The position numbers were made by a program, and so were the translations under genes. From Leucoraja ocellata (taxonomy: Eukaryota): 64,000 bases of DNA. The stretch lies in NCBI GenBank assembly GCA_036785375.1, contig JAWMAR010000424.1:620001-684000 (forward strand), read 5' to 3'. Below are positions 2,396 through 47,486 of this stretch, one piece after another (positions within the stretch are counted from its first letter, which is position 1; every line of letters begins with the position of its first letter). The notes below the pieces were generated by a model. The model was not told where the DNA came from, ran no database searches, and was given only the letters and a program-made list of their open reading frames with translations.

Positions 2396-2716
2396 CTAAA
2401 CCACAAATGAGTTTATCCGCAACTGCGATCACAATTGAGAATGGGACGGAGAAATCGGTGAAATGTGACAGTACTGCGTTTTACCCCTTGGCCATTCAGA
2501 TAAGCTGGCTCAAGAAATCAAAGAGTGGAGAACAGAAGATCCTAGACCACATTTGCACAGGATCTCCTGTTAAAAATGAGGATGGAACCTACAATGTGTC
2601 GAGCCACATGAGGCTACGTCCAACACTCCAGGATGATGGTAACACTTATGTCTGCATAGTGAGACATAGATCACTTGGTAAGGACACAGAGTTGACCACC
2701 CATCTGACTGTCAGAG
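2396..2716 (+). CDS. Ig-superfamily receptor gene, exon a: extracellular C1-set Ig domain (upstream leader/V exons lie outside the window)
   Basis: Acceptor ttatcttcacag|CT and donor AGAG|gtaagt, phase 1-1, 321 nt. Motifs VKCDSTAFYPLAIQISW, KNEDGTYNVSS and YVCIVRHRSL. Both cysteines and the Trp are present. Sequons NGT and NVS. Confidence 0.9.
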
Positions 2717-4051
2717 GTAAGTTTAATTTCAGTTATAGAGGTAATGTGGAAAGAGGCCCTTCAGCCCAATGAATCCACACCGACTATCGATCGGCCAAAT
2801 ATGGGGAGGTTAGTCTGGAGTAGATGGGTATCTTGGACAGTATGGACAAGTTGGGTTGAAGGGCATTTGTCTGTGTGGCATGATTCTAACTGATTGAAAG
2901 ATACAGCATGGAAACAGGCCCTTCGGCCCACCAAATCCATGCCAACCATCGATCACCTGTTCACACTAGTTCTATGTTATCCCACGTTCTTATCCACTCC
3001 CTGCACACTAGGTAGACAGAAATGCTGGAGAAACTCAGCGGGTGAGGCAGCATCAATGGAGTGAAGGAATAGGTGACGTTTCGGGTCGAGACCCTTCTTC
3101 AAACTGATGTGGGGGGGTGGGGGGGGGCGTTAAGAAAGGAAGAGGCAGAGGCAGTGGGCTGTGAGAGAGCTGGGAAGGGGAAAGAAGGAGGGAGAAAGCA
3201 GGGACTACCTGAAATTGGAGAAGTCAATGTTCAAAATATGAGGTGCTGCTCCTCCAATTTACGGTGGGACTCACTCTGGCCATGGAGAAGGCCCAGGACA
3301 GAAAGGTCACTACACCAATTGGTGTATGTGGCAATAAATGAAACATTGAGATGAGCTTCTCACTGGGGTCTCCTCTATATCCCGTAGCTCAACTCTCACT
3401 CCCCATCCCCACTCGTAACAAGGACAGAGTCCCCCTTGTCCTCACCTTCCACCCCATCAGCCGCCACAAACAACAGATAATACTCCAACATTTTTGCCAC
3501 CTCCAACGGGATCCCACCACAGGCCAAATCTTCCCATCTCCTCCCCTTTCAGCTTTCCGTAGAGACGGCTCCCACGTAACTCCCTGGTCAATTTGTCCCT
3601 TCCCACCCAAACTACCCGCTCCCCTGGTACTTTCCCTTGCAACCGCAGGAAATGCCACACTTGTCACTTTACCTCCCCCCGCGACTCCACCCAAGGACCC
3701 AAGCAGTCTTTCCAGGTGAGGCAGAGGTTCACCTGCACCTCCTCCAACCTCATCTATTGCATCCGCTGCTCTAGGTGTCAACTATTCTATATCGGTGAGA
3801 CCATGCGCAGGTTTGGCAATCACTTCGCCCAACATCTCCGCTTGGTTCGTATTAACCAACCTGATCTCCCGGTGGCTCAGTACTTCATCTTCCCCTCCCA
3901 TTCCGAATCCGACCTTTCTGTCCTGAGCCTCCTCCATGGCCAGTATGAGTCACACCTCAAATTGGAGGAGCAGCACCTTATATTTCGCTTGGGTAGTTTA
4001 CACCCCAGCGATATGAACATTAACTTCTCCAATTTCAGGTAGTCCTTGCTT

Positions 4052-4735
4052 TATATCTGCAATAATCTAAAATGGCACACCAACGCAGACCACATCATCA
4101 AGATAGGACAACAACGCCTATACTTCCTCAGACAGCTCAAAACGTTCAGAGTCCACAAACACCTCCTGGTCCGTTTCTATCAATCCATCATTGAAAGCAT
4201 CATCACCTCCTCAATCACAGTCTGGTATGGAAACACTGACAGTCACTCACTACACAGATTACAGCGCATTGTCTCCAAGGCCTCCAGGATCATCAACTCC
4301 CCCCTGCCCTCAACCCATTCCATTTATCTCCAACGTACCTCAAAACAGGCAATAAAGACCCCTCCCATCCAGCAAACCACCTTTTTCAGTCTCTCCCTTC
4401 AGGGAGGCGCCTCAGGTCACTTGCTACAAAATCCACCTGCTTTAAAAACAGTTTCTTCCCCTCAGCAATAAGAACACTTCATTCCCTCCAATAATCAGAC
4501 AATACTAAGACTTTTGATGTATACAGTGTCTTGTCTATGGTCTCGTTTGTTCTTTTGCTCTATGTATTGTTGGTGAGATTTGTGATTTGTGATGTGGTAT
4601 GGATGCACTTTATTACTGTGATCTGTGTTGTTATTAGTGTTAATGTGACTAAAGCAGTGTACCATCATGTACCGAACCCACATACCACCTACCCTGGTCG
4701 TGTGGCAAATAAAGATTCTATCTATCTATCTATCT
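4052..4735 (+). mobile_element. Rex1/Babar-like LINE 3' fragment inserted in the Penelope element
   Basis: QQRLYFLRQLK...FYQSIIESIITSSITVWYG. Ends with aataaa and a (tatc)n tail. Confidence 0.8.
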
Positions 4736-4818
4736 TTCTCTCCCCTTCCCAGCTCTCCCACAGCCTACTTACTGTCTCCACCTCTTCTTTTCTTTTTCCT
4801 GCCCCCCTACTTTAGATC

Positions 4819-4852
4819 AGTCTGAAGAAGGGTCTCGACCCGAAACGTCACT
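4819..4852 (+). ncRNA. Minimal type I hammerhead ribozyme motif at the Penelope 3' end
   Basis: agt-CTGAAGA-a-GGGTC tc GACCC-GAAA-cg-TC-act. Core boxes present, stem II, palindromic ACGT stem III, GUC cleavage triplet and a 3-bp stem I. Confidence 0.7.
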
Positions 4853-5164
4853 TATTCCTTTGCTCCATCGATGCTGCCTCGCCTGCGGAGTTTCTCCAGC
4901 ATTTTGGTCTTCCTTCGATTCATCCTGCATCTACAGTTCTTTCTTAAACAACCCTGCACACTAGGAGGCATTTATTTATGTAAACCAACATCTGCAGCAA
5001 GGAATCTGGCCAAACTTGCCTATGCCGATCAAGATGCCCCATCTAAGCTAGTCCCACCTGCCCGCGTTTGGTCCATGGCCCTCTCAACCTTTCTTATCCA
5101 TGTATCTGTCCAAGTGTCTTTTAAATGTAGTTATTGCACCTGCCTCAACTACCTCTTCTGGCAG

Positions 5165-5820
5165 TGAAAAAGCTACTTATCTTAACTACTAAACCAGGTT
5201 CGCTTCTTAATAAACAGACACCACACAAACGGTTTGGTAGACCAGTTCAAAACTTTACTTAGCATCGGCCGATGGAAGGGAGGGAGAACTCCAGTCAAGT
5301 GACCAACACAGACACTTGACTGTCCTCAGTCACCTTCCCTGAACAACAGAATTACATTGCTTTAAATAGGTTTTTTGTCCCCTTATCACATTCCACAGAC
5401 ATTAGTCATGGTCAGAAGTACTGGAAAAGGTTTCCACAGAATGCATCACATCAAACCTTTTTTTTACATGGTACAAGATATACTAAAAACATTGTCCATT
5501 TGTTTTATCTCCAAATAGACCACCCTTGCTCTGGTCGCTGCTTCCTCTGTCATTTGGTCCCTCATAAACATAGGTTATTTGTTTACAAAGATGTGACTGT
5601 TTATTTCTCTCTTCCTTTATCGCCTCCTCCCCATAAACATTGGTTTATGGCATCTCCCTGTGAAGATATCTCTCTAGCTCCTTCACTTGGGAGACAATGT
5701 TATCTCACACACCCCTGCAACCTGAGGCAAGCCTAATTTGAGACTAAATATAAGCTGTAAGCTAGCCCAGAAACCAATTTAATATCTTCTTATATTCTTT
5801 ACTAAAATTCAGCTTCATCA
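5165..5820 (-). repeat. ERV 3' LTR
   Basis: Direct repeat of 11679-12334. On the - strand it is preceded by the purine tract AAAAGGATGGAA (5821-5832) and contains TATTTAAA and AGTAAA. Confidence 0.95.
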
Positions 5821-6419
5821 TTCCATCCTTTTATCAAAATTTTGATAACAACTACAGTCCTTCCTGAGTACATACGAAAGACCATAAGCATCTCATCAGA
5901 CAATTTAATAGTACACTAGTAACACAATCAATTCATAGTGGACAATCGTTCCACAAGTCCCTCCAAACATTTTAAATGGCCACCAACCTCCCCCGGACGT
6001 GACACTATAATATACTACCATAGGACAGGAAAAGGATCATAAAAATTGCTCAGCCTTTATTCGGCTTCGCTTGGAATTCCCTGTGTGCTGGTGTAACTGG
6101 TTCATGCTTCTCTTGTGTGCACTGCATTTGCAACATAACAATGCCCTGTCACAAATATACTGTTTCCTTAAAATACACCAGTGCCTTGGTTGTGGCAAAA
6201 ACAGGTAGATTTAACTGGCCTTTGCAGACCTCTTACTGTCTGTAGTCAGGGTATCTTTGCTGCGCTTGTCATGTTTGCCTTCAATCTTGTTTAAAAGGAG
6301 GTGTGTACCATCCTTTAAATGTGGGTTAGTCCGCAAGTTTGCCATTCTGAAGAAAGTTCAGTCCATGTGGGCTAGGCCACCCCAGAATAAAGGAACATCA
6401 ATAGCCCATCGTCCTTGTT

Positions 6420-6510
6420 TCCACAAACTGTTCACAGTCAATCAAATGTATCCAGCGATGATGATCTTTCATCTTTACAGCAGTTCATGTTGTTAGCAAC
6501 ACTTGGTTGT
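6420..6510 (-). pseudogene. Retroviral integrase C-terminal remnant
   Basis: The minus strand reads QVLLTT*TAVKMKDHHRWIHLIDC, matching the gamma/epsilon-type QVLLTTxTAVK...WIH..hC motif. Confidence 0.7.
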
Positions 6511-9500
6511 TTCTTTTCAATACAGTTTCAATTTCTTCTTGTCCCAGCACCCCCATCGTATAGCTTTTATGGCTCCCAGCAAAGCTCCTCCAACCTGGGA
6601 ATGTAGATCTGGCAAGACATGGGTTAATTGCCGACCATACATAATTAGTTAATTGCACAGGGCCTGTTAGTGGCTTCCCCCCACTCTCCAGGGGTAATAA
6701 AACGTTGTAAATCTTGTTCACCAGCTTAGTTTCACCAGCACTTTTGTCCCCCTTTGATCCTCCATTTTCCTTCTTAACACTTCCCTGTGAATTTATTCTT
6801 TAATCCTATTATATCCGAAGAGGCTCTCTCCACCTAAATATTCAATTCTCCAAATATGTTCTCTTCCCCAATCTACTTTATCTTCTCACCTTTCATCCCT
6901 CATTGTGAGTTCCCTCAAACCTCCTTTTTTAAGTCATAAAACAATTTTTTCATCTACCTTCATTTCTCTCACACAGCCCATGCTTCAACATCTTTGTTTG
7001 CTTGAAAACAGTAATCTTGCTTCATTTGCATTTTAAAAGACAACCTCTGTTATCATATCAAAACAATCTTTTCCAAAAGAACTCATTCAGAATCGGTAAT
7101 CAATAATACATTTACTTTTCTCTGTAATTTTGACATTTCCAATCTCATTTAACACTTTAATCGGGATGAGTCTTTTTTAAACTTGGTTCAAAAGATCTAT
7201 AATCATCCAACACATTAGCACACCATAACCTTTGTAAATTTGCATTTTAAAGGACAACTTCTTAAAAAGTGACACACAACTTTGCTCATTGCTTCGAATT
7301 TCCCACATTCCACATACAAAAACATTGTTTTACAAGCAGTACATATACAAAAACATTGTTTTACCAGCTGTATATAATATTTCATTTTCAAAGACGTCTC
7401 TTTGTAATTTACTTTCCCTTTTTCTTTTTTTTTTCTTAGTTCTCATTTGATTGTTCTAAAACACACAATTTTAGGCCTACTGCTATTCCTAGCAATACTA
7501 TAAGCCTCTTCCTTTATTTTCTCCTGGCATTCAAAAACAAATCACATTTCTTGGGTTTTGATGCTTTAGAGGAATTATATAAATCATTTATTTGAATGAT
7601 AGCCATTGCATATCCATCATCAAGCTTTCTAATGTGGCTTGTCAGCCATCCCACTGCTCATAACTTCATAAATCCTTTTATTTCGATTTGAGAGTCCAAT
7701 TTTGTATTAACCCACATCAAACTCAATGTAAAATTCCACCATCCTATGTGGAATTTTCCCTAAAAGTGTCTTTAAAACAAGACTATTAATCAATCCCCTT
7801 AGTGTACAATACTCAATTCAACAATAAGCTTTTCCTTAGCTGGATCCTTAACATCATAGTTCTGAAAACCCTTGTATATATATTCTACAAATTTGTCCTT
7901 CACCTATAACTGATCATTCATTTTGTCGATCCTATATATGTAGATGATAGTACTTCATGCTTTTTCTATTTATCCATATCTGCATCTATTTTTTAATTAT
8001 GTTGTACTTAATGAATACACTACATTTCCACATTGCAGAGGGGATGAATTCCCAACAAAATGTCCACAAAGAGATTTAATGTACTGCCAAACCCTTGACA
8101 AAATTTGTTGATTCTTTTGCCTTTATTTAATTTTTCCTTACACAATTTCTATTAGAGAAAAGTAGGCCCAAATCCTCTATCGATTTCCTCCACAGATGCT
8201 GCCTGTCCCGCTGAGTTACTCCAGCACTTTGTGTTTTACTATTGCATTTACATTTTATTTGTGCTGTTAATTTATCTACCTTATTGCAATGCCGTACGCA
8301 ATTAAGTACATTGCCTTATTTTTCCTCATTTTATATACTCCAACCTAATTTACTACTTGTTTTTGTTTCCACTGCCTATTTATTTTGCTTTCCAGTTGTC
8401 TAATCTTTATTTTCCAACTTTCCTTCTTAAATTTCCTTTTGTTCCCATCCCCCTGCCAAGCTAGTTTAAATTCTCCCAACAGCACTTTGTGATTAATAAC
8501 ATATGTATATATCATTTTCCTCAATGCCAGAGAGCTAAAGACACATAATTCTCCGGATATGCTCCTACAAGCTCACCTTGCCCACAGAACTAAATCTGCA
8601 TTTTCTCCTGATTTTAAATTTATTTTTTTTTAAACACAAAATCATTCAATATCCCTTCCTTCTCATCTTTTTTACTTATTTTGCTTATATGTAATACTTC
8701 TCAGTTAGTCCCTTCAAACATGTTGTCATATTCCCAATACATATCGTGTAAACATCTCCCAACCACTTGTTCTTGAATATAGTACTGGTATCACCAAAAT
8801 CAATCCTCTATTTAATAGTTTAACAAATACAACGTGTTGCTAAAGTAGGAGCAATTCCAATCCAAGTCATTCTCATCATTCTTAATCTGTTACCTTCGAC
8901 ATAGAGATAACCAAATTTGTTCATCTTGGACCTTGCCTACAACTGAGACTCACTACCGAGAGACGTTATCCATCCAGACTTACTTTTACCAGAACCCCAG
9001 GACAGACTGAGTAGTCTCTCACAAGGTTGAACAACCTACCTACTGCAGGAATTGCCAGGCAGAGTGTTCTACAGACTCACCCTCAATGACATTTTGAAGG
9101 CTTTTTTTTGTTGCCAAAGGCATTAAAAAGGAATCAAATATATTCAAATAACAACTATTTAAATAGTTTAAACATAACAGATAGTTTAAAACATGAACAG
9201 TAAAACAACTCAAGCATGTAACTTTTTACACAGGTCGGCAACCCCATGCAAATGAATAAAGTTGCCATTCCTAATATGCAGTGCCACCACATTTCCTTTG
9301 TTATCCTATCATTCCCTCCTTACCAGCATGGGTAAGACGGGTAAAAATGTATCGTTATACACCAACTTGTCCAAGCGGGGTGTGCTGAATCAATGGCACA
9401 GCCCTCTTGTTTCCATAGTTATTATTATATACAAGAGGCGTCCCTCTATAATGTACATACCTCCCTCATGTTTGGCAGGACCGTTCTATTTGCTAGCATC

Positions 9501-10013
9501 TGTTTAGCTGCTGTCACTATGCATTAGGATGTACAGGCTGCACTGTTTGGATACACTATCAGCAACCCATTGCCTTTTGCTATAGGGTCCCCAGCACCAG
9601 TGTGTGCAGTACATTTAATAATGATCAGCTGTTCTGGTAGCATCAATGCCTTAACAAATTACACCCAGAAAGGCATTACCCTGCTCCCACTCCTGGAGAG
9701 CTTTGTAAGGTCAGAACTTCAAGTTATAGGGATGTTACTGACAGAACTGTCCCAGGTAAAGATGTCATTGCTACTGGTGGACATCTCCCAAGATTATCTA
9801 ACGCCTCATCTTCATTACCAAATAGGGTCGTCGTGCCAGACATGAAGTCTCCTCCAGAGGATTTACCAGTACTGGGTTTATTCTTTCGAACCATCACCTA
9901 TTTCTCACCTCCTGTCTGTCTTTTAATTCTATTCTCTTGTTCCTCTGCCCACTGGCATTCTAGTTGCAGTAATTTCCATCCTTTCCTAGTGCTATCCTTG
10001 TTTCTTAACTATC

Positions 10014-10600
10014 TAGCAATTTACCAAACTGTGAGATTTAAAAAAAAAATCAAATCTGCAATTTATCCCATCAGATAAAGCATAATAATAAGTTTAATTT
10101 GACACCTAATTCACTTTCATATCTCAAGTAATAAAAAAAATTATGGCCATTTTCATACTCGGAAATTAGCATCTTGTTCCCTATTGATTTTCTATGGACA
10201 TACAAAAAAACTGTGATCATGGACCGTCAAAAGCCCATAACCTTCTTAAAAATTAAGAGAACTGAATGAAATTTTCAGTTATCATAGATTGAACCATTCT
10301 GACACAAATATAAAATAATCTTACTTGGATGACCTGAAATTAAAACATATAATTAGTTAGTTACCCAATTGTAGCTAATTTCAAACTTCAATTACTAGAT
10401 CTAAACATATATCTATTTCTTAATAAATGATTAACATTTTTAAATAGCCTAAGTGTCCAAATTATATTCACAAATAATTCACAATAAAACATGATTTGTA
10501 AATCTCATTTACATCAATTTATAGGCCAAATGGAAGGAATTTAGTGTTCAATTGCTGTAAATTAAAGTCTATTTTAAATCGGCTTTCTAGTGGGTTCCTG
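10014..10600 (-). mobile_element. One-ended fragment of a TAG-terminated TIR element embedded in the ERV
   Basis: Approximate reverse complement of about 54510-55094, including the terminus TAGCAAT-TTAC. Confidence 0.85.
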
Positions 10601-10814
10601 TCTTCCTTTCCCATATCAACACCTCTGCTTATTTAATTGTCTCAACATTCCATGTGCCCCCTACTGGCCAGGCTTCATCCCGTAACCGTTTGGTCAACTT
10701 GTAACTTAACATTCTAAATTTCTTATTATACATAGGATTCAAATAACACATATATAGGACTGGTTTCCAGAGCATTCCCCATAGATAGATAGAAAGAAAG
10801 AGAGAGAAAAAACA

Positions 10815-11660: not shown

Positions 11661-11677
11661 CCTGCATAACTACGCCA
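11661..11677 (-). promoter_or_regulatory. Primer-binding site, tRNA-Ser type
   Basis: The minus strand reads TGGCGTAGTTATGCAGG directly after the 5' LTR. The + strand CCTGCATAACTACGCCA resembles the vertebrate tRNA-Ser 3' end CCTGCCGACTACGCCA. Confidence 0.75.
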
Positions 11678-11678
11678 A

Positions 11679-12334
11679 TGAAAAAGCTACTTATCTTAAC
11701 TACTAAACCAGGTTCGCTTCTTAATAAACAGACACCACACAAACGGTTTGGTAGACCAGTTCAAAACTTTACTTAGCATCGGCCGATGGAAGGGAGGGAG
11801 AACTCCAGTCAAGTGACCAACACAGACACTTGACTGTCCTCAGTCACCTTCCCTGAACAACAGAATTACATTGCTTTAAATAGGTTTTTTGTCCCCTTAT
11901 CACATTCCACAGACATTAGTCATGGTCAGAAGTACTGGAAAAGGTTTCCACAGAATGCATCACATCAAACCTTTTTTTTACATGGTACAAGATATACTAA
12001 AAACATTGTCCATTTGTTTTATCTCCAAATAGACCACCCTTGCTCTGGTCGCTGCTTCCTCTGTCATTTGGTCCCTCATAAACATAGGTTATTTGTTTAC
12101 AAAGATGCAACTGTTTATTTCTCTCTTCCTTTATCGCCTCCTCCCCATAAACATTGGTTTATGGCATCTCCCTGTGAAGATATCTCTCTAGCTCCTTCAC
12201 TTGGGAGACAATGTTATCTCACACACCCCTGCAACCTGAGGCAAGCCTAATTTGAGACTAAATATAAGCTGTAAGCTAGCCCAGAAACCAATTTAATATC
12301 TTCTTATATTCTTTACTAAAATTCAGCTTCATCA
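11679..12334 (-). repeat. ERV 5' LTR
   Basis: 656 bp. By eye it differs from the other LTR only at 12108-12109 (CA vs TG). Confidence 0.95.
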
Positions 12335-13473: not shown

Positions 13474-13590
13474 AGCCAGAAGTCGTTGTGCCAGGGGGAA
13501 TAATAACAGGCTGTGTTATTGGTAGTATACTGCTGTGTTCCTTGTTTATGATCGGAGGATTTTTAATGTATCTAAAGATTTTAAAAAAAG
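13474..13590 (+). CDS. Ig receptor exon b: transmembrane segment
   Basis: Acceptor ttttttcttacag|AG and donor AAAG|gtaaag, phase 1-1, 117 nt. Encodes EPEVVVPGGIITGCVIGSILLCSLFMIGGFLMYLKILKK, a hydrophobic helix followed by K..KK. Confidence 0.88.
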
Positions 13591-15155
13591 GTAAAGTTTC
13601 CTTCCCTGAACATTCAAAACAGTTTTGCCTAAGATCGTTTTTTGTGTTTGATATGGTATGGTATAGACTGCTTGCCTCCATCAGACACAACATTGAGTAT
13701 AAGAGGCAGGAAGTCATGTTGCAGCTTTATAGGACTTTAGTTAGGCCATATTTGGAGTAGTGCATGCAGTTATGCTCGCTACTTTACAAGAAGGATGTGG
13801 AGGCATGGGGAGAGATTTACCACAATGCTGCCTGGGTTAGAGGGTATTAAATACGGGAAAGATTGGACAAACTTGAGTGGTGAATCTCTGGAACTCTCTG
13901 CCACAGGTAGTTGAGGCCAGTTCTCTGGCTATATTTAAGAGTGAGTTAGATGTGGCCCTTGTGGCTAAAGGGATCAGGAGGTATGGCGAGAAGGCAGGTA
14001 CAGGATACTGATTTGGATGATCAGCCATGATCATATTGAATGGCGAATGGTGCAGGCTCGAAGGGCCGAATGGCCTACTCCTGCACCTATTTTCTATGTT
14101 TCTAAACTTTGATTATTTTCTCTAGAGTGAGGAAAAGGCTGAGGAAAGATCTGATAGAAATTATCAAATTATGCGAAGCATAGATAATCAGAATCTTATC
14201 CCTGGGGTGGAAATGTCAAAGACCAGAGGGCATAACTTTAAGATGAGAGGGGCAAAGTTTTATGGTTTTTTTACACAGAGGTGTGTTGGGGGTTGCCTGG
14301 AACATGCTGCGGAGGCAGAGCAGATTAATTTATGTTTGGCATGAGCATTGTGGGCTGAAGGGCCTGTTCCTGTGCTGTACTCTGTTCAATGTTCTATATT
14401 TCATGCATTTATTCACTTGACTGAATGTGAACTGTCAGATAGTTTTAGCTGATCTCCTGGAAAACATTAGTTAGATAGATAGAGTGGACGTGGAGAGGAT
14501 GGTTCCAGTAGTGGGAGAGTCTAGGACCAGAGGCCACAGCCTCAGAGTAAAAGGACGTTCCTTTAGAATGGAGATGAGAAAGAATTTCTTTAGCCAGAAG
14601 GGGGTGAATCTGTGGAATTAATTGCCACAGGCAGTTGTGGAGGCCAAATCATTGGGTATTTCTAAAGCCAAATAAATTGATAGGTTTTAAAGAATTGATA
14701 GGTTTGTGATTCCTTTCTAAAGGTAGGTACGTCCTTTTATTCTGAGGCTGTTCCCTCTGGTCCTAGACTCTCCCACTTGTGGAAGCATCCTCTCCACATC
14801 CATTCATTTCTATTAACGTCTAACTTTCATCGGCTGATCTTTCTTTGTTCTTGAGGTGCACCAGCATTTTTCACCTCTGCATTTCCAGTTCTTTTGTCCT
14901 TGCATCCTGATTTTGATTCATTTTTTCATATCCTTGGCCTTATTTTTGTCTCTGATCTACTTACTGATTCTCATGTTATTTATAAATGTGGAGATACCAA
15001 AAATGTAATGAGATATTGAGCCAGGTGTTCTTACATCCATATTTATTACAGTGGATGTTTTATGTAGATGAATGATGAATTTGTTCTGATACTTTTAAAG
15101 TGACATAAACCTCTTCCAAAAGAAGAATAACATCAAAATGCATTTATTTTTCTAG

Positions 15156-15569
15156 TACCTCCTAAAGTGTCTGAAATCGCCAAACCACCACACATTATAC
15201 ATTTGGAAGAAACTGTTCTGACTTGTCACATTTCAGGATATAAGCCTGCAGACATTTCGCTTTGTTGTTTTCTACAAAGAGAGGGAGGAAATAAAAGTGA
15301 GATTTTCCAATGGAGTTCTGCACCTGGCCACTCGCAAGCACCTGAAGCTATTGACCAGCAAAGTCTTATTTGCAACGGCGACTCTCCAAAGGAGTCTTTC
15401 AACATTGAGATGACAGCTGCTACACATGATGGCCGCTCCAGTGCAAAATGCAAAATTATATTCATCCCTGATATTGATAATGATGACGGAACTATCCTCT
15501 TTCTTCACGTTTTACATAGCACTCTTGGAAAGCCTATTATTAAATCCATCCAATTGAATGTTGAAGGAA
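15156..15569 (+). CDS. Ig receptor exon c: post-TM C1-like domain 1 (long insert; C-strand Trp and F-strand Cys absent)
   Basis: Acceptor tttttctag|TA and donor GGAA|gtaagt, phase 1-1, 414 nt. VPPKVSEI...LTCHISGYKP...FIPDIDNDDGTILFLHVLHSTL. Confidence 0.85.
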
Positions 15570-15582
15570 GTAAGTATACACT

Positions 15583-16901: not shown

Positions 16902-17288
16902 TTGCACCAAAGATGACGAATATTCTTGCTCCGCCTCACATTATTCATGAAGAGATGATTGTTCTGTCTTGTCCTATTGATGGATTTAAGCCAAGACCAC
17001 TGGCCATCACTTGGTACCAAAAACCCAACAGAGCAAACGAGAACATGGGATTGAAAGAAATTGTGAGAACTGTGTTTGGAAGCGAGGATGTTATTGCTGA
17101 TTGGGATCTGCCTAAATATTCCCACTCTCTAAATGAGTTGACCAATGAAGACAATACTTATAGTGTCACCAGTTTCCTAAAATTTACACCGACGATTCTC
17201 GCAGACCATGAAACAGTGTATGTTTGTGAAGTTGAACATCCAGCTACGGCTTCAAATACACAACGGCAGGTCAAACTTGACGTAAAAG
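16902..17288 (+). CDS. Ig receptor exon d: post-TM C1-set domain 2 (both cysteines kept)
   Basis: Pyrimidine tract plus aaaacag|TT acceptor and donor AAAG|gtacag, phase 1-1, 387 nt. LSCPIDGFKPRPLAITW...NEDNTYSVTSFL...YVCEVEHPA. Confidence 0.9.
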
Positions 17289-18590: not shown

Positions 18591-18653
18591 GAACAAAAAT
18601 CCCTGCAGAATGTCTGAACCTTTCACAGCTTTTTCCTTCCCCTTTCTCTTCAG

Positions 18654-18965
18654 CAATCCCAGAATGTGAAGACATTAAGTTGTCGCCGGAAATCCCAATT
18701 GCAGAAGAATTTGCTGTTTCAACCTGCAGGATACATTCCTTCTTCCCAAAGAACATTACAGTTACTTGGAAAATGGATAACAAACTAATGCAGGAAACTA
18801 AAGCTGAAAATGAACCCACCTTGGGCCCCGATGGTCGTTATAGCTTCACAGATCTTCTGAAGTTCATCCCTGCGCGAGAAGACCTTGGAAAGATATTAAC
18901 CTGCAAATTCCAGCATGAAAGTATCATCGGCACAAAAAGAACTGACCATAAATTGGATAAACTGA
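18654..18965 (+). CDS. Ig receptor exon e: post-TM C1-set domain 3 (both cysteines kept)
   Basis: Acceptor tttctcttcag|CA and donor CTGA|gtaagg, phase 1-1, 312 nt. STCRIHSFFPKNITVTW...GPDGRYSFTDLL...LTCKFQHES. Confidence 0.9.
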
Positions 18966-19436
18966 GTAAGGGAATGTTTTATTTCTTTTTTATTTTGAAA
19001 GATTGAATATCGGAGTCCATTGTTGTTCATTTACCTAGAGTGATCGAGCATGGAAACAGGCCCTTCGGCCCAACTTGCCCACACCAGCCAACATGTCCCA
19101 GCTACACTAGTCCACCCCTGCTTGCATTTGGTCCATATCCCTCCAAACCTGTCCTAACCATGTACCTGTTTAACTGTTTCTTAAACATTGGGATAGTCCC
19201 AGCCTCGACTACCTCCTCTGGCAGCTCGTTCCACACACCCACCACCCTTTGTGTGAAAACGTAACCCCACAGATTTCTATCAAATCTTTTCCCCTTCACC
19301 TTCAACCTATGTCCTCTGGTCCTCGATTCACCTAATCTGGGCAAGAGACTCTGTGCATCTACCTGATCTATTCCTCTCATAATTTTATACACCTATATAA
19401 GATCACCCTTCACCGCCCCTGCACTTCAAGGTCCAA

Positions 19437-21955: not shown

Positions 21956-22214
21956 TTACTGCCATTTAATTTGGCCATTCAGCCTATCAAGTCTACTTCA
22001 TCATCGATTCATAGTTGACCTATCTTTCCCCCTCAACCCCCTTCTCCTGCCTTCTCCCCATAACCCCCGACACCCGTACTAATCACCCCTGTCAACCCCC
22101 ACCTTAAAAATATCCATTGATTTGGCTTCCACAGCCTTTTGTGGCAATGAATTCCACAGATTTCACACACTCTGACTAAATAAATTCTTCCTCATCTCCT
22201 TTGAAAAGATACAT

Positions 22215-22429
22215 TGAAGTGTGATGATAATCCCGAAATGAAGGCGAGGAGCCCGGTGTTTCGGGAAGCATTTTATTTGCTGTCCTTCTCCTGACCAGAC
22301 AAGTCGGCAAGAGAGAGATTGCACCTAAATGTCCTTTATCCCTGTAGCTAAGGGCCGCCCCCGGACTCATCCATGCCCGTGCCGAGGAGTTCCATAGTGG
22401 AAATGGCCCGACTCTTGGGAGCCGCCACA
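22215..22429 (-). mobile_element. 215-bp solo LTR inserted in a CR1 fragment
   Basis: TG...CA ends, 4-bp TSD ACAT (22211-14 and 22430-33), AATAAA on the - strand. The flanks rejoin as CR1. Confidence 0.7.
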
Positions 22430-22605
22430 ACATCATTTTATTCTGAGGCTGTGGCCTGTGGTCGGAGAATCTCCCACTAGTAGAAACATCCTCTCCACAT
22501 TCACTCCATGTCGATTTTATGTCTATCTTTGGTATAAACCAGCATCTGCATTTGCTTTTGTATTACATTCTATCCAAGAGTTAATGTTGTTTTGTTTTTT
22601 TGCAG

Positions 22606-22929
22606 CGTCTCCACCGTTATTGGACGACATGAAAATTGAACCACAAAATCCCAAACCAGGAGATTTGACAACATTCTCGTGCCATGCACGTGGCTTCTAT
22701 CCAAAGGATGTTAAGTTCATGTGGTTCAAAAATGAGAAGATGATTGATGATAATGAGATCACTTTTACTGACCCAGAGATCGATAAAAACACTGGCTTCT
22801 TCTGCTGTGAAAGTCGGTGGAAGTATAAGATTTTACCTGATGACCATCAAATCAATTTCAAAGTTGAGGCTCTTCACTTTCAAACTGTTCATCGACCCGC
22901 TAAGGTCTTTCACACCTTACACCTTGGAG
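22606..22929 (+). CDS. Ig receptor exon f: post-TM C1-like domain 4 (F-strand Cys replaced by Val)
   Basis: Acceptor ttttttgcag|CG and donor GGAG|gtatgt, phase 1-1, 324 nt. FSCHARGFYPKDVKFMWFKN...TGFFCCESRW...FKVEALH. Confidence 0.9.
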
Positions 22930-23419
22930 GTATGTCATAGTCATACAGCCTGGAAACGGGCCCAGTTGCTCAACTTGTCCACACCGACCAACATGTCCCA
23001 TCTACACTAGTACCACCTGCTTACGTTTGGCCCATATCTCACTAAACCTGTCCTATCCAAGTACCTACCTAATTGTATACACCCACCACTCTTTGTGTGA
23101 GGAAGTTACCCCTCAGATTCATATTAAACCTTTCCCCCATTTACCTTGAATCTATGTCCCCTGGTTCTTGATTCCCTTTCTCTGGGCAAGCGACTGAGTC
23201 TACCTGCTCTATTCCTCTCATGATCTTGTCATGCGTTCATCATCTATTTTGTGGCTTGGACTAGTTTGGTTTCCCCGCCTTTTTCTTCTTCCTGTCTGAA
23301 GAAAGGTCCCAACTGTATATGATATTATGGAGACATATATAAAGTCGACAGTCAGAACCTTATTCCCCAGGGTGGAAATGCAAAGAATGCAAGGCATAGC
23401 TATGAATGTAGACACCAAG

Positions 23420-24730
23420 AAACTGTGGATAAGCTTTTCCCACTGAGAGTAGAGAAGATTCAAACTAGGGGGCATGACTTGAGAATTAAGGGACTGAAGT
23501 TTAGGGGTACCATGAGGGGGAACTTCTTTACTCAGAGAGTGGTGGCTGTGTGGAATGAGCTTCCAGTGGAAGTGGTGGAGGCAGGTTTGATTTTATCATT
23601 TAAAAATAAATTTGATAGATATATGGATGGGAAAGGAATGGAGGGTTATGGTCTGAGTGCAGGTAGATGGGACTAGGGGAGAATAAGTGTTCGGCATGGA
23701 CTAGAAGGGCCGAGATGGCCGATTAGGAAAAGGGGAGATGCAACGAGACCTGGGTGTCATGGTACACCAGTCATTGAAAGTAGGCATGCAGGTGCAGCAG
23801 GCAGTGAAGAAGGCGAATGGTATGTTAGCATTCATAACATAAGGACTTGAGTGTAGGAGCAGGGAGGTTCTACTGCAGTTGTACAGGGTCTTACTGAGAT
23901 CACACCTGGAGTATTGCGTACAGTTTTGGTCTCCTAATCTGAGGAAGGACATTCTTGCCATAGAGGGAGTGCAGAGAAGGTTCACCAGGCTGATTCCTGG
24001 GATGTCAGGACTTTCATATGAAGAGAGACTGGATAGATTTGGCTTGTACTCGCTAGAATTTAGAAGATTGGGGGGGGGGATCTTATAGAAACTTACAAAA
24101 ACAAGATGCAGGAAGATTGTTCCCGATGTTGGGGAAGTCCAGAACAAGGGGTCACAGTTTAAGGATAAGGGGGAAATCTTTTAGGACCAAGATGAGTGGT
24201 GAATCTTTGGAATTCTCTGCCACAGAATGTAGTTGAGGCCAGTTCATGGGCTATATTTAAGAGGGATGTGGCCCTTGTGGCTAAAGGGATCAGGGGGTAT
24301 GGAGAGAAGGCAAGTACAGGATACTGAGTTGGATGATCAGCCATGATCATGACTTCAGAATTAAGGGACAGAAGTTTAGGGGTAACATGAGGGGGAACTT
24401 CTTTACTCAGAGAGTGGTAGCGGTGTGGAATGAGCTTCCAGTGGAAGTGGTGTTGGCAGGTTCATTGGTATCATTTAAAAATAAATTGGATAAGCATATG
24501 GATGAGAAGGGAATGGAGGGTTATGGTATGAGTGCAGGCAGGTGGGACTAAGGGAAAAAAGTTGTTCGGCACGGACTTGTAGGGCCGAGATGGCCTGTTT
24601 CCGTGCTGTAATTGTTATATGGTTATATGATCATATTGAATGGCGGTGCAGGCTCGAAGGGCCGAATGGCCTACTGCTGCACCTATTTTCTTTGTTTCTA
24701 TGTTTCCGTGCTGTAATGGTTATATGGTTA
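23420..24730 (+). mobile_element. Nested 3' ends of two CR1 subfamilies (B containing A containing B)
   Basis: Alternating blocks with (ggttatat)n and (ttctatgt)n tails. The interrupted sequences resume at about 24630 and about 24701. Confidence 0.75.
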
Positions 24731-24780
24731 AGTCAATGTTCATACAACCATCCTACCAACAATTAGTGAGCATTCCTGAC

Positions 24781-25707
24781 CAAAGATCCTATAGCGGAGC
24801 AAGATAGGCTACTCCTGCGAAATGCGATGGGCTGACGTGTAGTACGCTATGGAGGCGATCCTGGGCATTTTTCCCCGCCCATTTTAGTAACCGGAGCCTA
24901 CCTGACCCGACCCGACCCGACTCGCAGTGTTATCAACGTTGTGGGGGAACAGTTTGTGTGTGTGATATAGGGTTAGATTCATAATTCTGTTAGTTCATAC
25001 TTCTGTTCATTCTTGTTAAAGAATTAAATGTTTATAAACACACAAACATGAATGTGATATAAATGTATATACTCATATAACACACAGAATTATAGTTCTT
25101 CTGATTTTTATATCCAATAATGAACTTTATTTCAGACTAGACAAGGGACATTAAATAAGAAACATTGTAAACCTCCCCGCAACTTCACACACACTAAGCC
25201 CTAACCCCCCCCCCCCCCCCGGCACTCCCTCGCCTCCCCCCACACTACAATGTCTCCCCCCCCGCCTATGCTGTAGTCCCTTAACCCACCAGCCCTCAGC
25301 CCCCAACCCCACATCTCTCCCCATGCTTTCTGCACCCCGGCCCCTACCCCACCTCTCTCTCCCAAAGATCTTATACCGGAGCTCCGCTATAAGATCTTTG
25401 CTCTCTCCCTCCCCCGGCCCTACTTAACCTTCCTGCGCCACCACTACCCCACTTGCACTACTCCCTTCCTCTCTTCCAGCTGCCCCGGACCGCACACCCC
25501 CCCTCTCCCCGGGCCGTGCACCCCTTCTCCCCACCCAAGTCAAAGACTTGCGAAGATACGGGAGCGGAGGTGGAAGCAAAGATCCGATCTTTGGCCGGAA
25601 GCAAGATGGCGGAACAAGATGGCGTAGGCTGGTTGCTAAAATGAGTCCTATAATCACCCATGAATCTGCCCAGGAGTAGGCCATCTTGCTCTGCTATAAG
25701 ATATTTG
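24781..25707. mobile_element. Non-autonomous P-superfamily-like DNA transposon (MITE)
   Basis: TIRs CAAAGATCCTATAGCGGAGCAAGAT and ATCTTGCTCTGCTATAAGATATTTG, CA...TG termini, and an 8-bp TSD ttcctgac/gtcctgac (7/8). Confidence 0.8.
25363..25400. mobile_element. 38-bp TIR-TIR remnant of the same family (probable excision footprint)
   Basis: CAAAGATCTTATACCGGAGCTCCGCTATAAGATCTTTG, flanked by a perfect 8-bp TSD CTCTCTCC (25355-62 and 25401-08). Confidence 0.8.
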
Positions 25708-26013
25708 GTCCTGACCTACTCTCTACCATCAGACTGTAATTGATCAGACTTTACTGTACTTTATATTGCACTAAACTATATTCAAGTTACTCCCTGTATC
25801 CTGTATCTACACCGAGGATGGCTCGAATGCAATCACGTATAGCCTGTCCACTGACTGGAGAGCACACATACTTCAGTACACGTGACAACAAAACTAAAAT
25901 AATTGCCAGTTTGAGTGCATTTGTTCTGGGAAAAGGCAGGTTTGTTTACCGCAACTGCACTATAATAAAATTGAGCAATATCTAAACTTTGTCTGTTTTA
26001 TTTTTCCAAATAG

Positions 26014-26325
26014 GAACTCCAATGCTTTCTGATATCATTCTTGAGCCAGAAACTCCATTCTATGGCCAGCCTCTAGTTCTTAAATGCAACGTGACCAATT
26101 TTTCTCAGAATGGAATCTCCACCAATTGGCTAATGGACAATGAACCTATTTTGAAAGGAGTCAGGAATACAGACCCCAGGGAGGAACAAGATGGAATTTA
26201 TCAGTTGTGCTCCTGTCTGGACCTGACACCCACAGCTTTACATTACAACAAGAAACTTGTCTTTGAGGTGAAAAATGAAGTTACATCTGAAGTTATTACC
26301 AAACACTTATATTTACCACTTCCAG
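26014..26325 (+). CDS. Ig receptor exon g: post-TM C1-like domain 5 (F-strand Cys replaced by Phe)
   Basis: Acceptor tttttccaaatag|GA and donor CCAG|gtaagt, phase 1-1, 312 nt. LKCNVTNFSQNGISTNW...QDGIYQLCSCL...LVFEVKN. Confidence 0.88.
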
Positions 26326-26925
26326 GTAAGTGAAACTGGTGGGAAGCCTTAACTTAAAAAAATTGTTAACAAGGATGGAATTGATCAGTCGGGTACTAAG
26401 GTTTTAAAAGTAAACTTTGGGTGGCGCAGAGGTGGAGTTGTGGACTTGCAACACCAGACACTCGGATTCGATCCTGACCTCGGGTGCTATCTATGCCGAG
26501 TTTGCATGTTCTCCCCTTGACCGAGTGGGCTTCCACCGGGTGCTCTGGTTTCCTCCCACATCCCAAAGAGCTGCAGGTTTGGAGGTTAATTGGCTTTGGT
26601 AAAATTGTAAATTGCCCCTTGTGTGTAGGTTAGGGCTAGTGAATGGGCTGATCGCTAGTCGGCTTACTCAGTGGGCCGAAGGCCCTGTTTCCACTATGTA
26701 TCTCCAAAGTCTAAAGTAAAAGTTAATTGACCTCTGTAAATTGTCCCCTACTGTATGGGGAGTGGATGAGAAAATGGGATAACATAGAACTAGTGTGAAC
26801 ATGTTAGCGATGGCCAGCGTGGATTAGCTAGGCCTAAGAGCCCAGCTTGCAGTATTTCTGAACTAAACTATCCACTGTCGAAAGTGAGACCATCTCAATA
26901 TGTGCATATTCTACTCTATTTTAAG

Positions 26926-27233
26926 GTAATTCCCCCAATGTGTCTGAAATCAACCGCAAAGCTCAAGAGGAAAGCACAGTGGCATCTTTCATGGTTTCGT
27001 TGACTGATTATGTACCTCAGAAAATTGAGGTGAAGTGGTTCAAAGGAGAACAACGCTATGTAGGGCCTGTCCATAATAGTCAACCTCGGGTTGCCACCAC
27101 TGGCCTCTTCTCTTCAACAACAGAAATACAATTTATTCCAGAACCATCTGATCATGACTTGGAAATCAGATGTGAGATATTTCATCTGGAAACAAAGAAA
27201 AGGATTTACCGAAAGTGTCGCTTAACATTTTGA
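26926..27233 (+). CDS. Ig receptor exon h: post-TM C1-like domain 6 (B-strand Cys replaced by Val), ends in TGA
   Basis: Acceptor ctctattttaag|GT, phase 1. SFMVSLTDYVPQKIEVKWFKG...TGLFSSTTEI.FIP...IRCEIFH. The TGA at 27231-33 is followed by G|gtaaat. Confidence 0.85.
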
Positions 27234-39510: not shown

Positions 39511-39514
39511 TATA

Positions 39515-47462: not shown

Positions 47463-47486
47463 ACTAATTTCCATCCTGCACTCAAA

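What the first reader, a model, noticed from the sequence alone, without database searches (positions are those of the whole stretch)
2396..27233. Membrane receptor with a predicted cytoplasmic array of six C1-type Ig domains
Seen: eight exons with AG/GT sites, all phase 1, join into one frame of about 831 aa: C1 domain, TM, then 6 C1-like domains (about 685 aa), then stop. The TM is followed by LKILKK. The domain before the TM has both cysteines and two N-glycosylation sequons. Only 1.56 kb, mostly CR1 debris, separates the TM from the next Ig exon, and I saw no leader exon or second TM. Established: the positive-inside rule gives type I topology, and C1-set domains (Ig, TCR, MHC, B2M, tapasin, SIRP, some B7 members) are normally lumenal or extracellular. 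Inference: this is a B7-H6/tapasin/SIRP-like receptor whose cytoplasmic tail is a tandem Ig scaffold rather than a motif-bearing peptide, a possibly undescribed signalling architecture. I cannot tell whether homologues are already described.
Basis: partly seen in the sequence, partly recalled or inferred. Interest (0 to 1): 0.92.

Follow-up and report, generated by a model that had tools for sequence, protein, structure and literature searches.

The report
B7-like receptor with cytoplasmic Ig array
This cartilaginous-fish gene encodes a B7-family surface protein whose tail behind the membrane helix is built of six antibody-type (C1-like) domains, an arrangement shared by sharks, coelacanth, lungfish, bichirs and amphibians that I could not find described in print.

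Summary
Eight phase-1 exons (2396-27233, + strand) encode a C1-set domain, a transmembrane (TM) segment, and six further C1-like Ig domains before a stop.

An intron-less 3,517-nt public contig encodes a 958-aa protein. It matches all eight exons at 97-100% identity, with one junction residue between neighbours. So the TM exon is joined to the next Ig exon in RNA.

Proteins with the same order (signal peptide, B7-type V, C1, TM, Ig array) occur in rays, sharks, chimaera, coelacanth, lungfish, bichir, newt and frogs. All are annotated "uncharacterized" or NCR3LG1. Each of the six post-TM domains forms its own cross-species clade.

Cytoplasmic placement is inferred, not shown. For it:
- one TM segment, with positive charge after it;
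- glycosylation sequons at chance level after the TM;
- an ancient loss of the disulfide in four of the six domain types;
- related arrays fused to PYRIN (frogs) or TRIM RING-B-box-coiled-coil (bichirs), with no signal peptide.

Against it:
- RefSeq isoforms in four species skip exactly the TM exon;
- domains d and e keep both cysteines;
- two domains carry semi-conserved sequons.

No paper describing this was found. The scan noted similar genes on other DNA of this genome (s1-884593, s1-884740, s1-884739).

The parts
2396..2716 (+). Exon a: the membrane-proximal extracellular C1-set Ig domain. It has both canonical Cys, the Trp, and the sequons NGT and NVS.
   Evidence: Pfam C1-set 1.1e-11. 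Best solved relative is the human B7-H6/NCR3LG1 C domain at 6.6e-16; UrIg2 C3 scores 1.6e-14. It is 98.1% identical to P0192 residues 129-234.
13474..13590 (+). Exon b: a short stalk, a hydrophobic TM segment of about 23 residues, and the basic stop-transfer LKILKK.
   Evidence: Sequence read. 100% identical to P0192 residues 236-273. Hydropathy is 2.34 over 19 residues. The homologous TM exon is present in 15 of 17 orthologues.
13591..15155 (+). Intron b-c, 1,565 bp of repeat debris. It holds no leader-like exon.
   Evidence: No ATG...GT phase-1 mini-ORF with a hydrophobic core was found. ATTAAA lies at 13846 and AATAAA at 14671. Reverse-transcriptase-like ORF fragments are present.
15156..15569 (+). 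Exon c: the first post-TM Ig domain, starting directly after the basic cluster (K-K-V-PPKVSEI). It is divergent: the Trp is replaced by Cys, the F-strand Cys by Leu, and there is a long C-D insertion.
   Evidence: Pfam C1-set is only 0.12. hhalign of c against d gives 99.5% probability, E 2.2e-22. The clade of 7 taxa has 100/97 support. 97.8% identical to P0192 residues 275-411.
16902..17288 (+). Exon d: the second post-TM Ig domain. It keeps both Cys and the Trp, and carries an insertion with the conserved K-Y-S-H-S motif.
   Evidence: Pfam C1-set 1.7e-09. As a query it found 226 relatives, 23 of them at E<=1e-30. Clade support 100/99. Both Cys are kept in 75 of 80 d-type domains.
18654..18965 (+). 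Exon e: the third post-TM Ig domain, with both Cys and the Trp.
   Evidence: Pfam C1-set 1.4e-11. Clade support 100/99. 99.0% identical to P0192 residues 542-644.
22606..22929 (+). Exon f: the fourth post-TM Ig domain. The F-strand Cys is replaced by Val.
   Evidence: Pfam C1-set 4.7e-07. Both Cys are present in only 2 of 26 f-type domains. Clade support 86/94.
26014..26325 (+). Exon g: the fifth post-TM Ig domain. The F-strand Cys is replaced by Phe. It carries the sequons NVT and NFS.
   Evidence: Pfam C1-set 5.8e-12. 100% identical to P0192 residues 754-856. Each of its two sequons is present in 6 of 11 orthologues.
26926..27233 (+). Exon h: the sixth post-TM Ig domain. The B-strand Cys is replaced by Val. 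It ends ...RLTF with the stop TGA at 27231-27233, followed at once by G|GTAAAT.
   Evidence: Pfam C1-set 2e-05. The same C-terminus...L[TA]F, is seen in 8 of the 9 orthologues printed. The donor-like site is at 27234.
27626..27631 (+). AATAAA, a candidate polyadenylation signal 393 nt after the stop.
   Evidence: Pattern scan. Its position fits a 3,517-nt transcript that carries a 2,877-nt ORF. The site itself is not tested.

Best explanation
The window holds the last eight exons of a B7-family gene. Its leader and V exons lie upstream of the window.

The main product is a type I membrane protein: signal peptide, B7-type IgV, C1-type IgC (exon a), a short stalk and one TM helix with a basic stop-transfer (exon b). 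The tail is made entirely of six C1-like Ig domains (exons c-h). The first of these abuts the inner face of the membrane with no linker.

Shown:
- the exons and their splicing into one mRNA;
- the B7 affinity of the ectodomain;
- the conservation of the whole plan, and of each tail domain, across cartilaginous and bony fishes and amphibians.

Inferred:
- The array is cytosolic and folds without the Ig disulfide.
- It acts as a rigid protein-binding or oligomerising scaffold that couples the B7-like ectodomain to partners inside the cell.
- In architecture it takes the place that B30.2 takes in butyrophilins, TRIMs and pyrin. Closely related arrays are attached to TRIM RING-B-box-coiled-coil modules in bichirs and to PYRIN domains in frogs.
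- A minor secreted isoform that skips the in-phase TM exon probably exists as well.
For: Splicing.
- P0192 has 958 aa and comes from a Logan contig of only 3,517 nt; 8 cluster members.
- It matches the exons at these identities: a 98.1%, b 100%, c 97.8%, d 96.9%, e 99.0%, f 99.1%, g 100%, h 99.0%.
- Exactly one residue lies between neighbouring exons, and the protein ends RLTF.
- The same exons span 24.8 kb in the window, so the contig has no introns.

Conservation.
- 17 proteins match at E<=1e-10 to the post-TM part of Pristis XP_051885227. They include Mobula, Hypanus, Rhinoraja, Narcine, Heptranchias, Rhincodon and Callorhinchus.
- The same plan occurs in Latimeria, Protopterus, Erpetoichthys, Lissotriton and frogs.
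- A Callorhinchus member, V9K7L7, I recall as transcript-derived; the transcript deposit itself is stated in PMC3964593.
- In a tree of 62 domains, c, d, e, g and h each form a clade of 7 taxa with support of at least 99/95; f has 86/94.
- Among 11 orthologues, mean pairwise identity is 52-62% for the tail domains, 63% for a and 64% for V.

Topology.
- 80 of 150 relatives have one internal TM followed by at least 250 aa. Net charge is -0.51 before the TM and +2.83 after it, and is higher after it in 71 of 80.
- Sequons run at 1.27 per 100 aa in the ectodomain (0.75 expected) and 0.64 after the TM (0.56 expected).
- Both canonical Cys are present in 85 of 99 pre-TM C-type domains and 201 of 391 post-TM domains. 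By type: c 1/34, f 2/26, g 6/26, h 0/14.

Cytosolic relatives.
- 7 of 29 bichir hits are RING + B-box + TRIM coiled coil + C1-set. Their array is 63% identical to residues 485-821 of a B7-like protein whose TM lies at 233-251.
- 16 of 120 frog hits from 11 genera carry PYRIN + C1-set. Six of these are 552-554 aa long.
- None of the 17 TRIM or PYRIN proteins examined has a hydrophobic segment above 1.51.
- These proteins still keep Cys pairs.
Against:
- RefSeq isoforms skip exactly the TM exon in the orthologues of Carcharodon and Cetorhinus ('QLTVK|VPPKVS'), and in Bombina and Erpetoichthys relatives. With the signal peptide present, that form would put the array in the secretory pathway.
- Domains d and e keep both cysteines (75/80 and 32/38), as a disulfide-bonded domain would.
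- In the orthologue set, sequons are partly conserved in c (7 of 11) and g (6 of 11, twice). Sequon density in c (0.97 per 100 aa) and g (1.40) is close to that of exon a (1.46).
- The best frog PYRIN-array alignments also run over the ecto C1 domain of the B7-like proteins. One PYRIN domain falls with the 'a' clade. So the frog arrays are not purely 'post-TM type'.
- The TRIM and PYRIN proteins are gene models. Two PYRIN rows (P0236, P0327) look like merged neighbouring genes.
- No structure could be predicted.
- The function is analogy only.
Confidence: 0.75

Rival explanations
1. The TM exon is usually skipped. The real product is then a secreted, UrIg-like chain of one V and seven C1 domains, all outside the cell. 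On this view the TM-containing mRNA is a minor or membrane-anchored variant, and its tail placement is incidental.
For: - Exon b is flanked by phase-1 introns, so the a-c join stays in frame.
- TM-skipped RefSeq isoforms exist in Carcharodon, Cetorhinus, Bombina and Erpetoichthys.
- Domains d and e keep both Cys.
- Sequons in c and g are semi-conserved.
- Shark UrIg is a secreted V + 3 C1 protein (PMC12227049, passages read).
Against: - The only transcript-like contig for this species or its sister includes the TM exon.
- 15 of 17 orthologue entries, and 80 of 150 relatives, carry the TM.
- The TM exon is as conserved as the domains, with 60.5% mean pairwise identity.
- Four of the six domain types have had a single unpaired canonical Cys since before the split of cartilaginous and bony fishes. 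By inference that is awkward in the ER.
- Related arrays sit in PYRIN and TRIM proteins that have no signal peptide.
Confidence: 0.13
2. Exons a-b and exons c-h belong to two neighbouring genes. On this view the single frame is a coincidence, or an artefact of gene prediction that merges neighbours.
For: - Merged models do occur in this family. P0236 of Lithobates reads PYRIN-Ig array, then V-C1-TM-Ig array.
- C1-set domains are otherwise known only outside the cell (recalled).
Against: - An intron-less 3,517-nt contig carries all eight exons in one ORF.
- The junction 'KK-V-PPKVS' recurs from sharks to coelacanth.
- There is no leader-like exon in the 1,565-bp gap.
- The d-like domain sits at about residues 430-560 in dozens of proteins.
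Confidence: 0.02
3. The protein is membrane-bound but the array is not cytosolic. Either the hydrophobic segment does not act as a stop-transfer anchor, or the protein sits in an internal organelle with the array facing a lumen.
For: Nothing direct. Retained Cys pairs in d and e and the sequons in c and g would fit a lumenal array.
Against: - N-terminal signal peptides are present in the orthologues.
- There is one strongly hydrophobic segment (2.3-3.5 over 19 residues), with the positive charge after it in 71 of 80 proteins.
- No second hydrophobic segment is seen in the tails.
Confidence: 0.05
4. The six tail exons are a decaying remnant (a pseudogene tail). That would explain the lost cysteines and the stop codon sitting next to a donor site.
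For: - Four of the six domains lack the canonical disulfide.
- The stop is followed at once by a consensus donor.
Against: - All eight exons are open with intact splice sites.
- The same Cys losses and the same ...L[TA]F end are shared by rays and sharks.
- The tail domains are as conserved as the ectodomain.
Confidence: 0.01

Closest known systems
Human B7-H6 (NCR3LG1), ligand of NKp30
   Same: It has the same start: signal peptide, IgV, C1-type IgC and a single TM. Exon a's best solved relative is the B7-H6 C domain (6.6e-16). Several long-tailed relatives are auto-named NCR3LG1, for example Bombina XP_053576614 and a Rhinophrynus model.
   Different: The human tail is not made of Ig domains; I recall it as a Gag-like stretch with ITIM, SH2 and SH3 motifs. 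Here the tail is six Ig domains. The V domain of the transcript scores higher with CD276/B7-H3 (3.8e-15) than with B7-H6 (9e-9). Orthology and NKp30 binding were not tested.
Butyrophilins (e.g. BTN3A1): B7-like ectodomain + TM + cytosolic B30.2
   Same: The logic is the same: a B7-type IgV-IgC ectodomain, one TM, then a folded beta-sandwich module in the cytosol. That module is also used by TRIM proteins and, with a PYRIN domain, by pyrin (recalled). Here the Ig array is likewise shared with TRIM (bichir) and PYRIN (frog) proteins.
   Different: No PRY/SPRY is present; only Ig families match. The tail module is an array of six Ig domains, not one B30.2. This is resemblance in plan, not homology.
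Shark UrIg2 (PMC12227049)
   Same: It is a non-rearranging elasmobranch IgSF gene with one V, many C1-type exons and a TM. Exons a and e hit UrIg2 C3 (1.6e-14 and 3e-10).
   Different: In UrIg2 all 9-11 C1 domains precede the TM and keep the disulfide and Trp (passages read). Here only one C1 precedes the TM, and four of the six that follow lack the disulfide. The V here is B7-type.
Integrin beta4 cytoplasmic tail (recalled, not tested)
   Same: It is a type I membrane protein whose long cytoplasmic tail is built of beta-sandwich modules of an otherwise extracellular type (FN3), and the tail serves as a scaffold.
   Different: The modules are FN3, not Ig C1. There is no sequence relation, and the ectodomain is different.
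Uncharacterized TRIM-Ig (Polypterus/Erpetoichthys) and PYRIN-Ig (frog) proteins
   Same: They carry the same kind of C1-like Ig array. The array of TRIM protein P0128 is 63% identical to the post-TM array of B7-like P0204. PYRIN arrays are 41-61% identical to frog B7-like proteins.
   Different: They have no signal peptide, V domain or TM. Their N-terminus is RING-B-box-coiled coil or PYRIN. They are distant from the window's own domains (18-39% identity per exon).

Membership tests
B7 family / B7-H6 (NCR3LG1)-like | N-terminal signal peptide and a B7-type IgV domain | tested here: met
   The V exon is not in the window. It is present in transcript P0192 and in the orthologues. Its best solved relatives are CD276 (3.8e-15), NCR3LG1 (9e-9) and PD-L2; 10 sequences match in all.
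B7 family / B7-H6 (NCR3LG1)-like | Membrane-proximal IgC domain of C1 type, followed by a single TM | tested here: met
   Exon a: Pfam C1-set 1.1e-11 and best hit the B7-H6 C domain. Exon b: TM hydropathy 2.34.
B7 family / B7-H6 (NCR3LG1)-like | One-to-one orthology with human NCR3LG1 (phylogeny, synteny with NCR3/MHC) | not tested
   I have only automatic names on some relatives and AI notes of a B7-H6-like cluster. The V domain scores higher with CD276.
B7 family / B7-H6 (NCR3LG1)-like | Binding to NKp30 | not testable with these tools
   This needs a binding assay.
Butyrophilin | Cytosolic B30.2 (PRY/SPRY) domain after the TM | tested here: not met
   No PRY/SPRY match in any exon or in the Pristis orthologue P0002. 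Only Ig families match.
UrIg / UrIg2 | All C1 domains N-terminal to the TM (UrIg2), or no TM at all (UrIg), with disulfide and Trp kept in every domain | tested here: not met
   The TM lies after the first C1. Domains c, f, g and h lack a canonical Cys, and c also lacks the Trp. UrIg features are taken from passages of PMC12227049.
Pfam C1-set (PF07654) Ig domain | Score above the gathering threshold (21 bits) | tested here: met
   Met for a, d, e, f, g and h (25.3-46.2 bits). Not met for c (13.2 bits). Domain c is tied to d by hhalign at 99.5% probability.
Pfam C1-set (PF07654) Ig domain | Canonical B-F disulfide pair and C-strand Trp | tested here: inconclusive
   The residues at the B-strand Cys, C-strand Trp and F-strand Cys positions are: a CWC, d CWC, e CWC, c CCL, f CWV, g CWF, h VWC.
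Type I membrane protein with a cytosolic tail | Cleavable signal peptide, one TM, positive-inside flank | tested here: met
   Signal peptides are seen in the orthologues. 80 of 150 relatives have one internal TM. Charge is -0.51 before and +2.83 after it, higher after in 71 of 80. This rests on hydropathy only; no dedicated predictor or experiment was used.

The most novel reading that the evidence does not exclude
The c-h array is one member of an unrecognised class of cytosolic C1-type Ig modules in non-amniote jawed vertebrates. It would be the Ig-fold counterpart of B30.2: a module that binds ligands or drives assembly inside the cell.
- Behind a B7-like ectodomain, it would report the cell's internal state to NKp30-like receptors, as BTN3A1 does for gamma-delta T cells.
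- Behind a PYRIN domain, it would seed inflammasome-type assemblies.
- Behind a TRIM RING-B-box-coiled coil, it would direct ubiquitination.

If true, the domain type that defines antibodies, TCR and MHC has had an intracellular life since before cartilaginous and bony fishes split.
Probability: 0.3. Interest if true: 0.93.

Novelty: new variant of a known kind. Interest (0 to 1): 0.82.

Why it matters
C1-set domains are the signature of the adaptive immune system: Ig, TCR, MHC, beta2-microglobulin, tapasin and a few B7 and SIRP members. By my recollection they are treated as strictly extracellular or lumenal.

Here a B7-family protein carries six of them behind its membrane anchor. The arrangement, and each tail domain individually, is kept from chimaera, sharks and rays to coelacanth, lungfish, bichirs and amphibians. 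Relatives of the same arrays sit in proteins whose other domains (PYRIN, TRIM RING-B-box-coiled coil) are cytosolic.

If the topology is confirmed, three things follow:
- an unrecognised intracellular use of the Ig C1 fold;
- a possible ancestral state of B7-H6-type NK ligands;
- a parallel to butyrophilin/B30.2 inside-out signalling.

The claim is directly testable with tagging, protease protection and pull-downs.

Tried and rejected
Reads and runs.
No junction counts exist for this genome.
- The look-up of sequencing runs listed no holder on record as RNA.

I therefore had no orthologue DNA, no dN/dS and no check of the P0192 contig.
There is no fold of any domain and no fold search.

Ideas tested and rejected.
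- Separate gene for c-h: no leader-like exon in the b-c gap, and the intron-less contig joins b to c.
- More exons downstream (a second TM, acidic exons, a last Ig as in Narcine or Callorhinchus long forms): tblastn of four relatives finds nothing outside the eight exons.
- Pseudogene tail: rejected on conservation.
- 'Systematic' loss of the disulfide after the TM: only partly true. Domains d and e keep it, and PYRIN and TRIM proteins keep Cys pairs too. Cysteine retention therefore argues neither way.
- P0236 and P0327 (V-set + PYRIN) as proof that PYRIN lies behind a TM: rejected. PYRIN is N-terminal and the models look like merged neighbours.
- Tyrosine motifs of ITIM/ITSM type in c-h: I looked by eye only, with no call, and saw none.

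Papers.
- Passages read: PMC12227049, PMC10751288, PMC3964593.
- Not held, so unseen: Flajnik et al. 2012 (PMC3709836) and Ohta & Flajnik 2015 (PMC4594805). Either could mention long B7H6 tails.
- Supplements were not asked for. Gene tables there could bear on the novelty claim.
- All other papers were seen only as search listings.

The joined step was left out. I never joined the window's exons into one protein. All searches used single exons or natural database proteins.

Full report
**1. What is in the window**

Reading the sequence and listing splice sites gives eight + strand exons. All are bounded by AG and GT, and all introns are phase 1:
- a: 2396-2716
- b: 13474-13590
- c: 15156-15569
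- d: 16902-17288
- e: 18654-18965
- f: 22606-22929
- g: 26014-26325
- h: 26926-27233, with the stop at 27231-27233

Searched exon by exon, Pfam puts C1-set first and above its threshold for a, d, e, f, g and h. Exon c reaches only 0.12. A profile of c from seven taxa matches the d profile at 99.5% probability (E 2.2e-22 over 122 columns). So c is a divergent sister of d.

Exon b encodes a short stalk, a hydrophobic stretch of about 23 residues, and LKILKK.

The canonical Cys / Trp / Cys residues are:
- CWC in a, d and e
- CCL in c
- CWV in f
- CWF in g
- VWC in h

The 1,565-bp b-c gap is repeat debris with no leader-like mini-exon.

It finds nothing but these eight exons. There is no V exon and nothing beyond 27,230.

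**2. Are the exons one mRNA?**

The answer came from proteins instead.

phmmer with exon d against 1.84 billion representatives gave 226 hits at E<=1e-3 and 23 at E<=1e-30. In many proteins of 950-1,250 aa the d-like domain sits at about residues 430-560.

The Pristis pectinata protein XP_051885227 (977 aa) reads: signal peptide, V, C1, TM, 'YLKYFRK-V-PPKVSDI', six Ig domains, '...HLTF'. The window's junction codons (E at a/b, V at b/c, I at c/d) are the same as in that model.

A word-based search with the post-TM part of the Pristis protein returned 17 proteins. One of them, P0192, comes from a Logan contig of only 3,517 nt and has 958 aa.
- Identity to the window's exons: a 98.1%, b 100%, c 97.8%, d 96.9%, e 99.0%, f 99.1%, g 100%, h 99.0%.
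- That is 12 mismatches in 823 residues.
- The exons occupy residues 129-234, 236-273, 275-411, 413-540, 542-644, 646-752, 754-856 and 858-958.
- One junction residue lies between each pair, and the protein ends at RLTF.

The same exons span 24.8 kb in the window. The contig therefore has no introns: it is a spliced transcript of this species or a sister species, or, less likely, a retrocopy.

**3. How old and how constrained**

Orthologues with the same six tail domains include Rhinoraja (75-91% per exon), Mobula, Hypanus, Pristis, Narcine, Heptranchias, Pristiophorus, Rhincodon, Chiloscyllium and Callorhinchus LOC103174894. Eight of the nine whose ends I printed also share the ...L[TA]F end; the Callorhinchus one ends differently.

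Longer relatives with the same start occur in Callorhinchus (LOC103174895), Amblyraja, Narcine, Latimeria, Protopterus, Erpetoichthys, Lissotriton and many frogs. All are named 'uncharacterized', or in a few cases NCR3LG1. The Callorhinchus entries include UniProt V9K7L7, which I recall as transcript-derived. PMC3964593 states that assembled transcripts were deposited.

Among all named hits I saw no teleost and no amniote. One odd nematode protein was the only hit outside these groups.

A tree of 62 single domains from the window and six species puts each of c, d, e, g and h in its own clade, with one member per taxon (support at least 99/95). Domain f has 86/94. The six-domain tail, with each domain already distinct, therefore predates the split of cartilaginous and bony fishes.

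Mean pairwise identity among 11 orthologues:
- tail domains: 52-62%
- exon a: 63%
- V: 64%
- TM exon: 60.5%

**4. On which side of the membrane is the array?**

Nothing here is direct.

*For a cytosolic array*

(i) Hydropathy and charge.
- Of the 150 best relatives, 80 have one internal hydrophobic segment at residues 200-520 followed by at least 250 aa.
- 48 have none. These are partial models, TM-skipped isoforms, and PYRIN or TRIM proteins.
- 3 have several. The rest (19 by subtraction) have one segment outside my limits.
- Net charge is -0.51 in the 15 residues before the segment and +2.83 after it. It is higher after it in 71 of 80.

(ii) N-x-S/T sequons.
- Ectodomains: 1.27 per 100 aa, against 0.75 expected from shuffles.
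- After the TM: 0.64, against 0.56 expected.

(iii) Cysteines.
- Both canonical cysteines are present in 85 of 99 pre-TM C-type domains and in 201 of 391 post-TM domains.
- The loss is type-specific and old: c 1/34, f 2/26, g 6/26, h 0/14.
- The surviving partner Cys is mostly kept. Inference: a lone buried thiol kept this long fits a reducing compartment.

(iv) Relatives without any signal peptide or TM carry cytosolic modules.
- 7 of 29 bichir hits are RING + B-box + TRIM coiled coil + two or three C1-set domains.
- One such protein is 733 aa in both Polypterus and Erpetoichthys.
- Its array is 63% identical to residues 485-821 of a B7-like protein whose TM is at 233-251.
- 16 of 120 frog hits, from 11 genera, are PYRIN + C1-set. 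Six of them are 552-554 aa long.
- None of the 17 such proteins I scanned has a hydrophobic window above 1.51.

*Against a cytosolic array*

(a) RefSeq lists isoforms that skip exactly the TM exon.
- This holds in the orthologues of Carcharodon and Cetorhinus ('QLTVK|VPPKVS').
- It also holds in Bombina and Erpetoichthys relatives.
- In the window the a-c join would also stay in frame.

(b) Domains d and e keep both cysteines (75/80 and 32/38). But the TRIM and PYRIN proteins keep Cys pairs as well, so this weighs little.

(c) Within the orthologue set, sequons are semi-conserved in c (7 of 11) and g (6 of 11, twice). Their density there is near that of exon a.

(d) The frog PYRIN arrays also resemble the ecto C1 domain. 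Two PYRIN rows look like merged gene models.

(e) No structure prediction was possible.

**5. Most likely working**

Shown: a B7-family type I membrane protein whose whole tail is six Ig domains, made from one mRNA and under long-term constraint.

Inferred, at about 0.75: in the TM-containing form the tail is cytosolic. The first tail domain starts one residue after the basic stop-transfer cluster, and the ecto C1 ends about eight residues before the helix. Ectodomain, helix and tail therefore look tightly coupled.

Inferred by analogy, and weaker: the array is a binding or oligomerising scaffold. It holds the same architectural slot as B30.2 in butyrophilins, TRIMs and pyrin, so it could link an intracellular event to what the B7-like ectodomain shows to a lymphocyte receptor.

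A secreted TM-less isoform probably exists beside it.

**6. Comparison with what is known**

- Ectodomain: B7 family. Exon a is nearest to the human B7-H6 C domain. The V domain of the transcript is nearest to CD276, then B7-H6. Orthology to NCR3LG1 and NKp30 binding are untested.
- Butyrophilin: it is not one, as it has no B30.2.
- UrIg/UrIg2: it is not one. There all C1 domains precede the TM and keep their disulfides (passages of PMC12227049).
- Integrin beta4's FN3 tail is a recalled analogy only.

**7. Novelty**

Nine full-text searches produced no paper that describes a B7-type protein with an Ig-domain tail, or PYRIN/TRIM proteins with C1-set arrays. They covered UrIg; B7H6 with shark, with Xenopus and cytoplasmic, and with IgSF; six locus and accession ids; six phrasings of 'cytoplasmic Ig domains'; and C1-set with tail, pyrin and TRIM terms.

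Two relevant papers were not held and remain unseen, and supplements were not consulted.

The proteins are in public databases as uncharacterized models. The sequences are therefore not new; the reading of them appears to be.

The scan's own notes list similar genes elsewhere in this genome. I used these as leads only.

Noticed in passing
window 5162-5820 and 11676-12334: A 659-bp segment occurs twice at 99.5% identity inside the 10.7-kb intron between exons a and b. Each copy carries the same 138-codon open frame. It looks like a recent duplication or two young copies of one element.
   Followed up: partly
window 53313-53825: A 27-bp tandem repeat of 19 copies with 93% matches. It lies in the most GC-rich part of the window (GC 0.61 at 52-54 kb).
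   Followed up: partly
window 27231-27240: The stop codon of exon h is followed at once by a consensus phase-1 donor, G|GTAAAT. Long paralogues in other species continue here into acidic repeats and a last Ig domain. This could be a vestige of that structure.
   Followed up: partly
window 36280-40931, 45639-48342, 51508-52620: Long open frames whose translations look like reverse transcriptase and integrase, on both strands. I did not run them against any family library.
   Followed up: no
P0236 (Lithobates pipiens), P0327 (Dendrobates tinctorius): These gene models read PYRIN-Ig array followed by V-C1(-TM)-Ig array with no second leader. They are probably two neighbouring genes merged, which would mean PYRIN-Ig and B7-like genes sit side by side in frogs.
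   Followed up: partly
P0199 and P0010 (Callorhinchus LOC103174894 and LOC103174895): A short form (962 aa, six tail domains) and a long form (1,106 aa, with an acidic stretch and an extra Ig) carry consecutive gene numbers. Notes s1-885067 and s1-885426 suggest the same tandem pair upstream of this window.
   Followed up: no
P0004 (Heterodera trifolii, 7,287 aa): A nematode protein matches exon d in 26 stretches at E 1.1e-52. It may be a generic giant Ig-repeat protein or contamination.
   Followed up: no
same genome, another piece (note s1-884578): An earlier AI note reports a B7-like IgV ectodomain joined in frame to NACHT-LRR. If real, that is another case of a B7-type head on a cytosolic innate-immunity module.
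   Followed up: no
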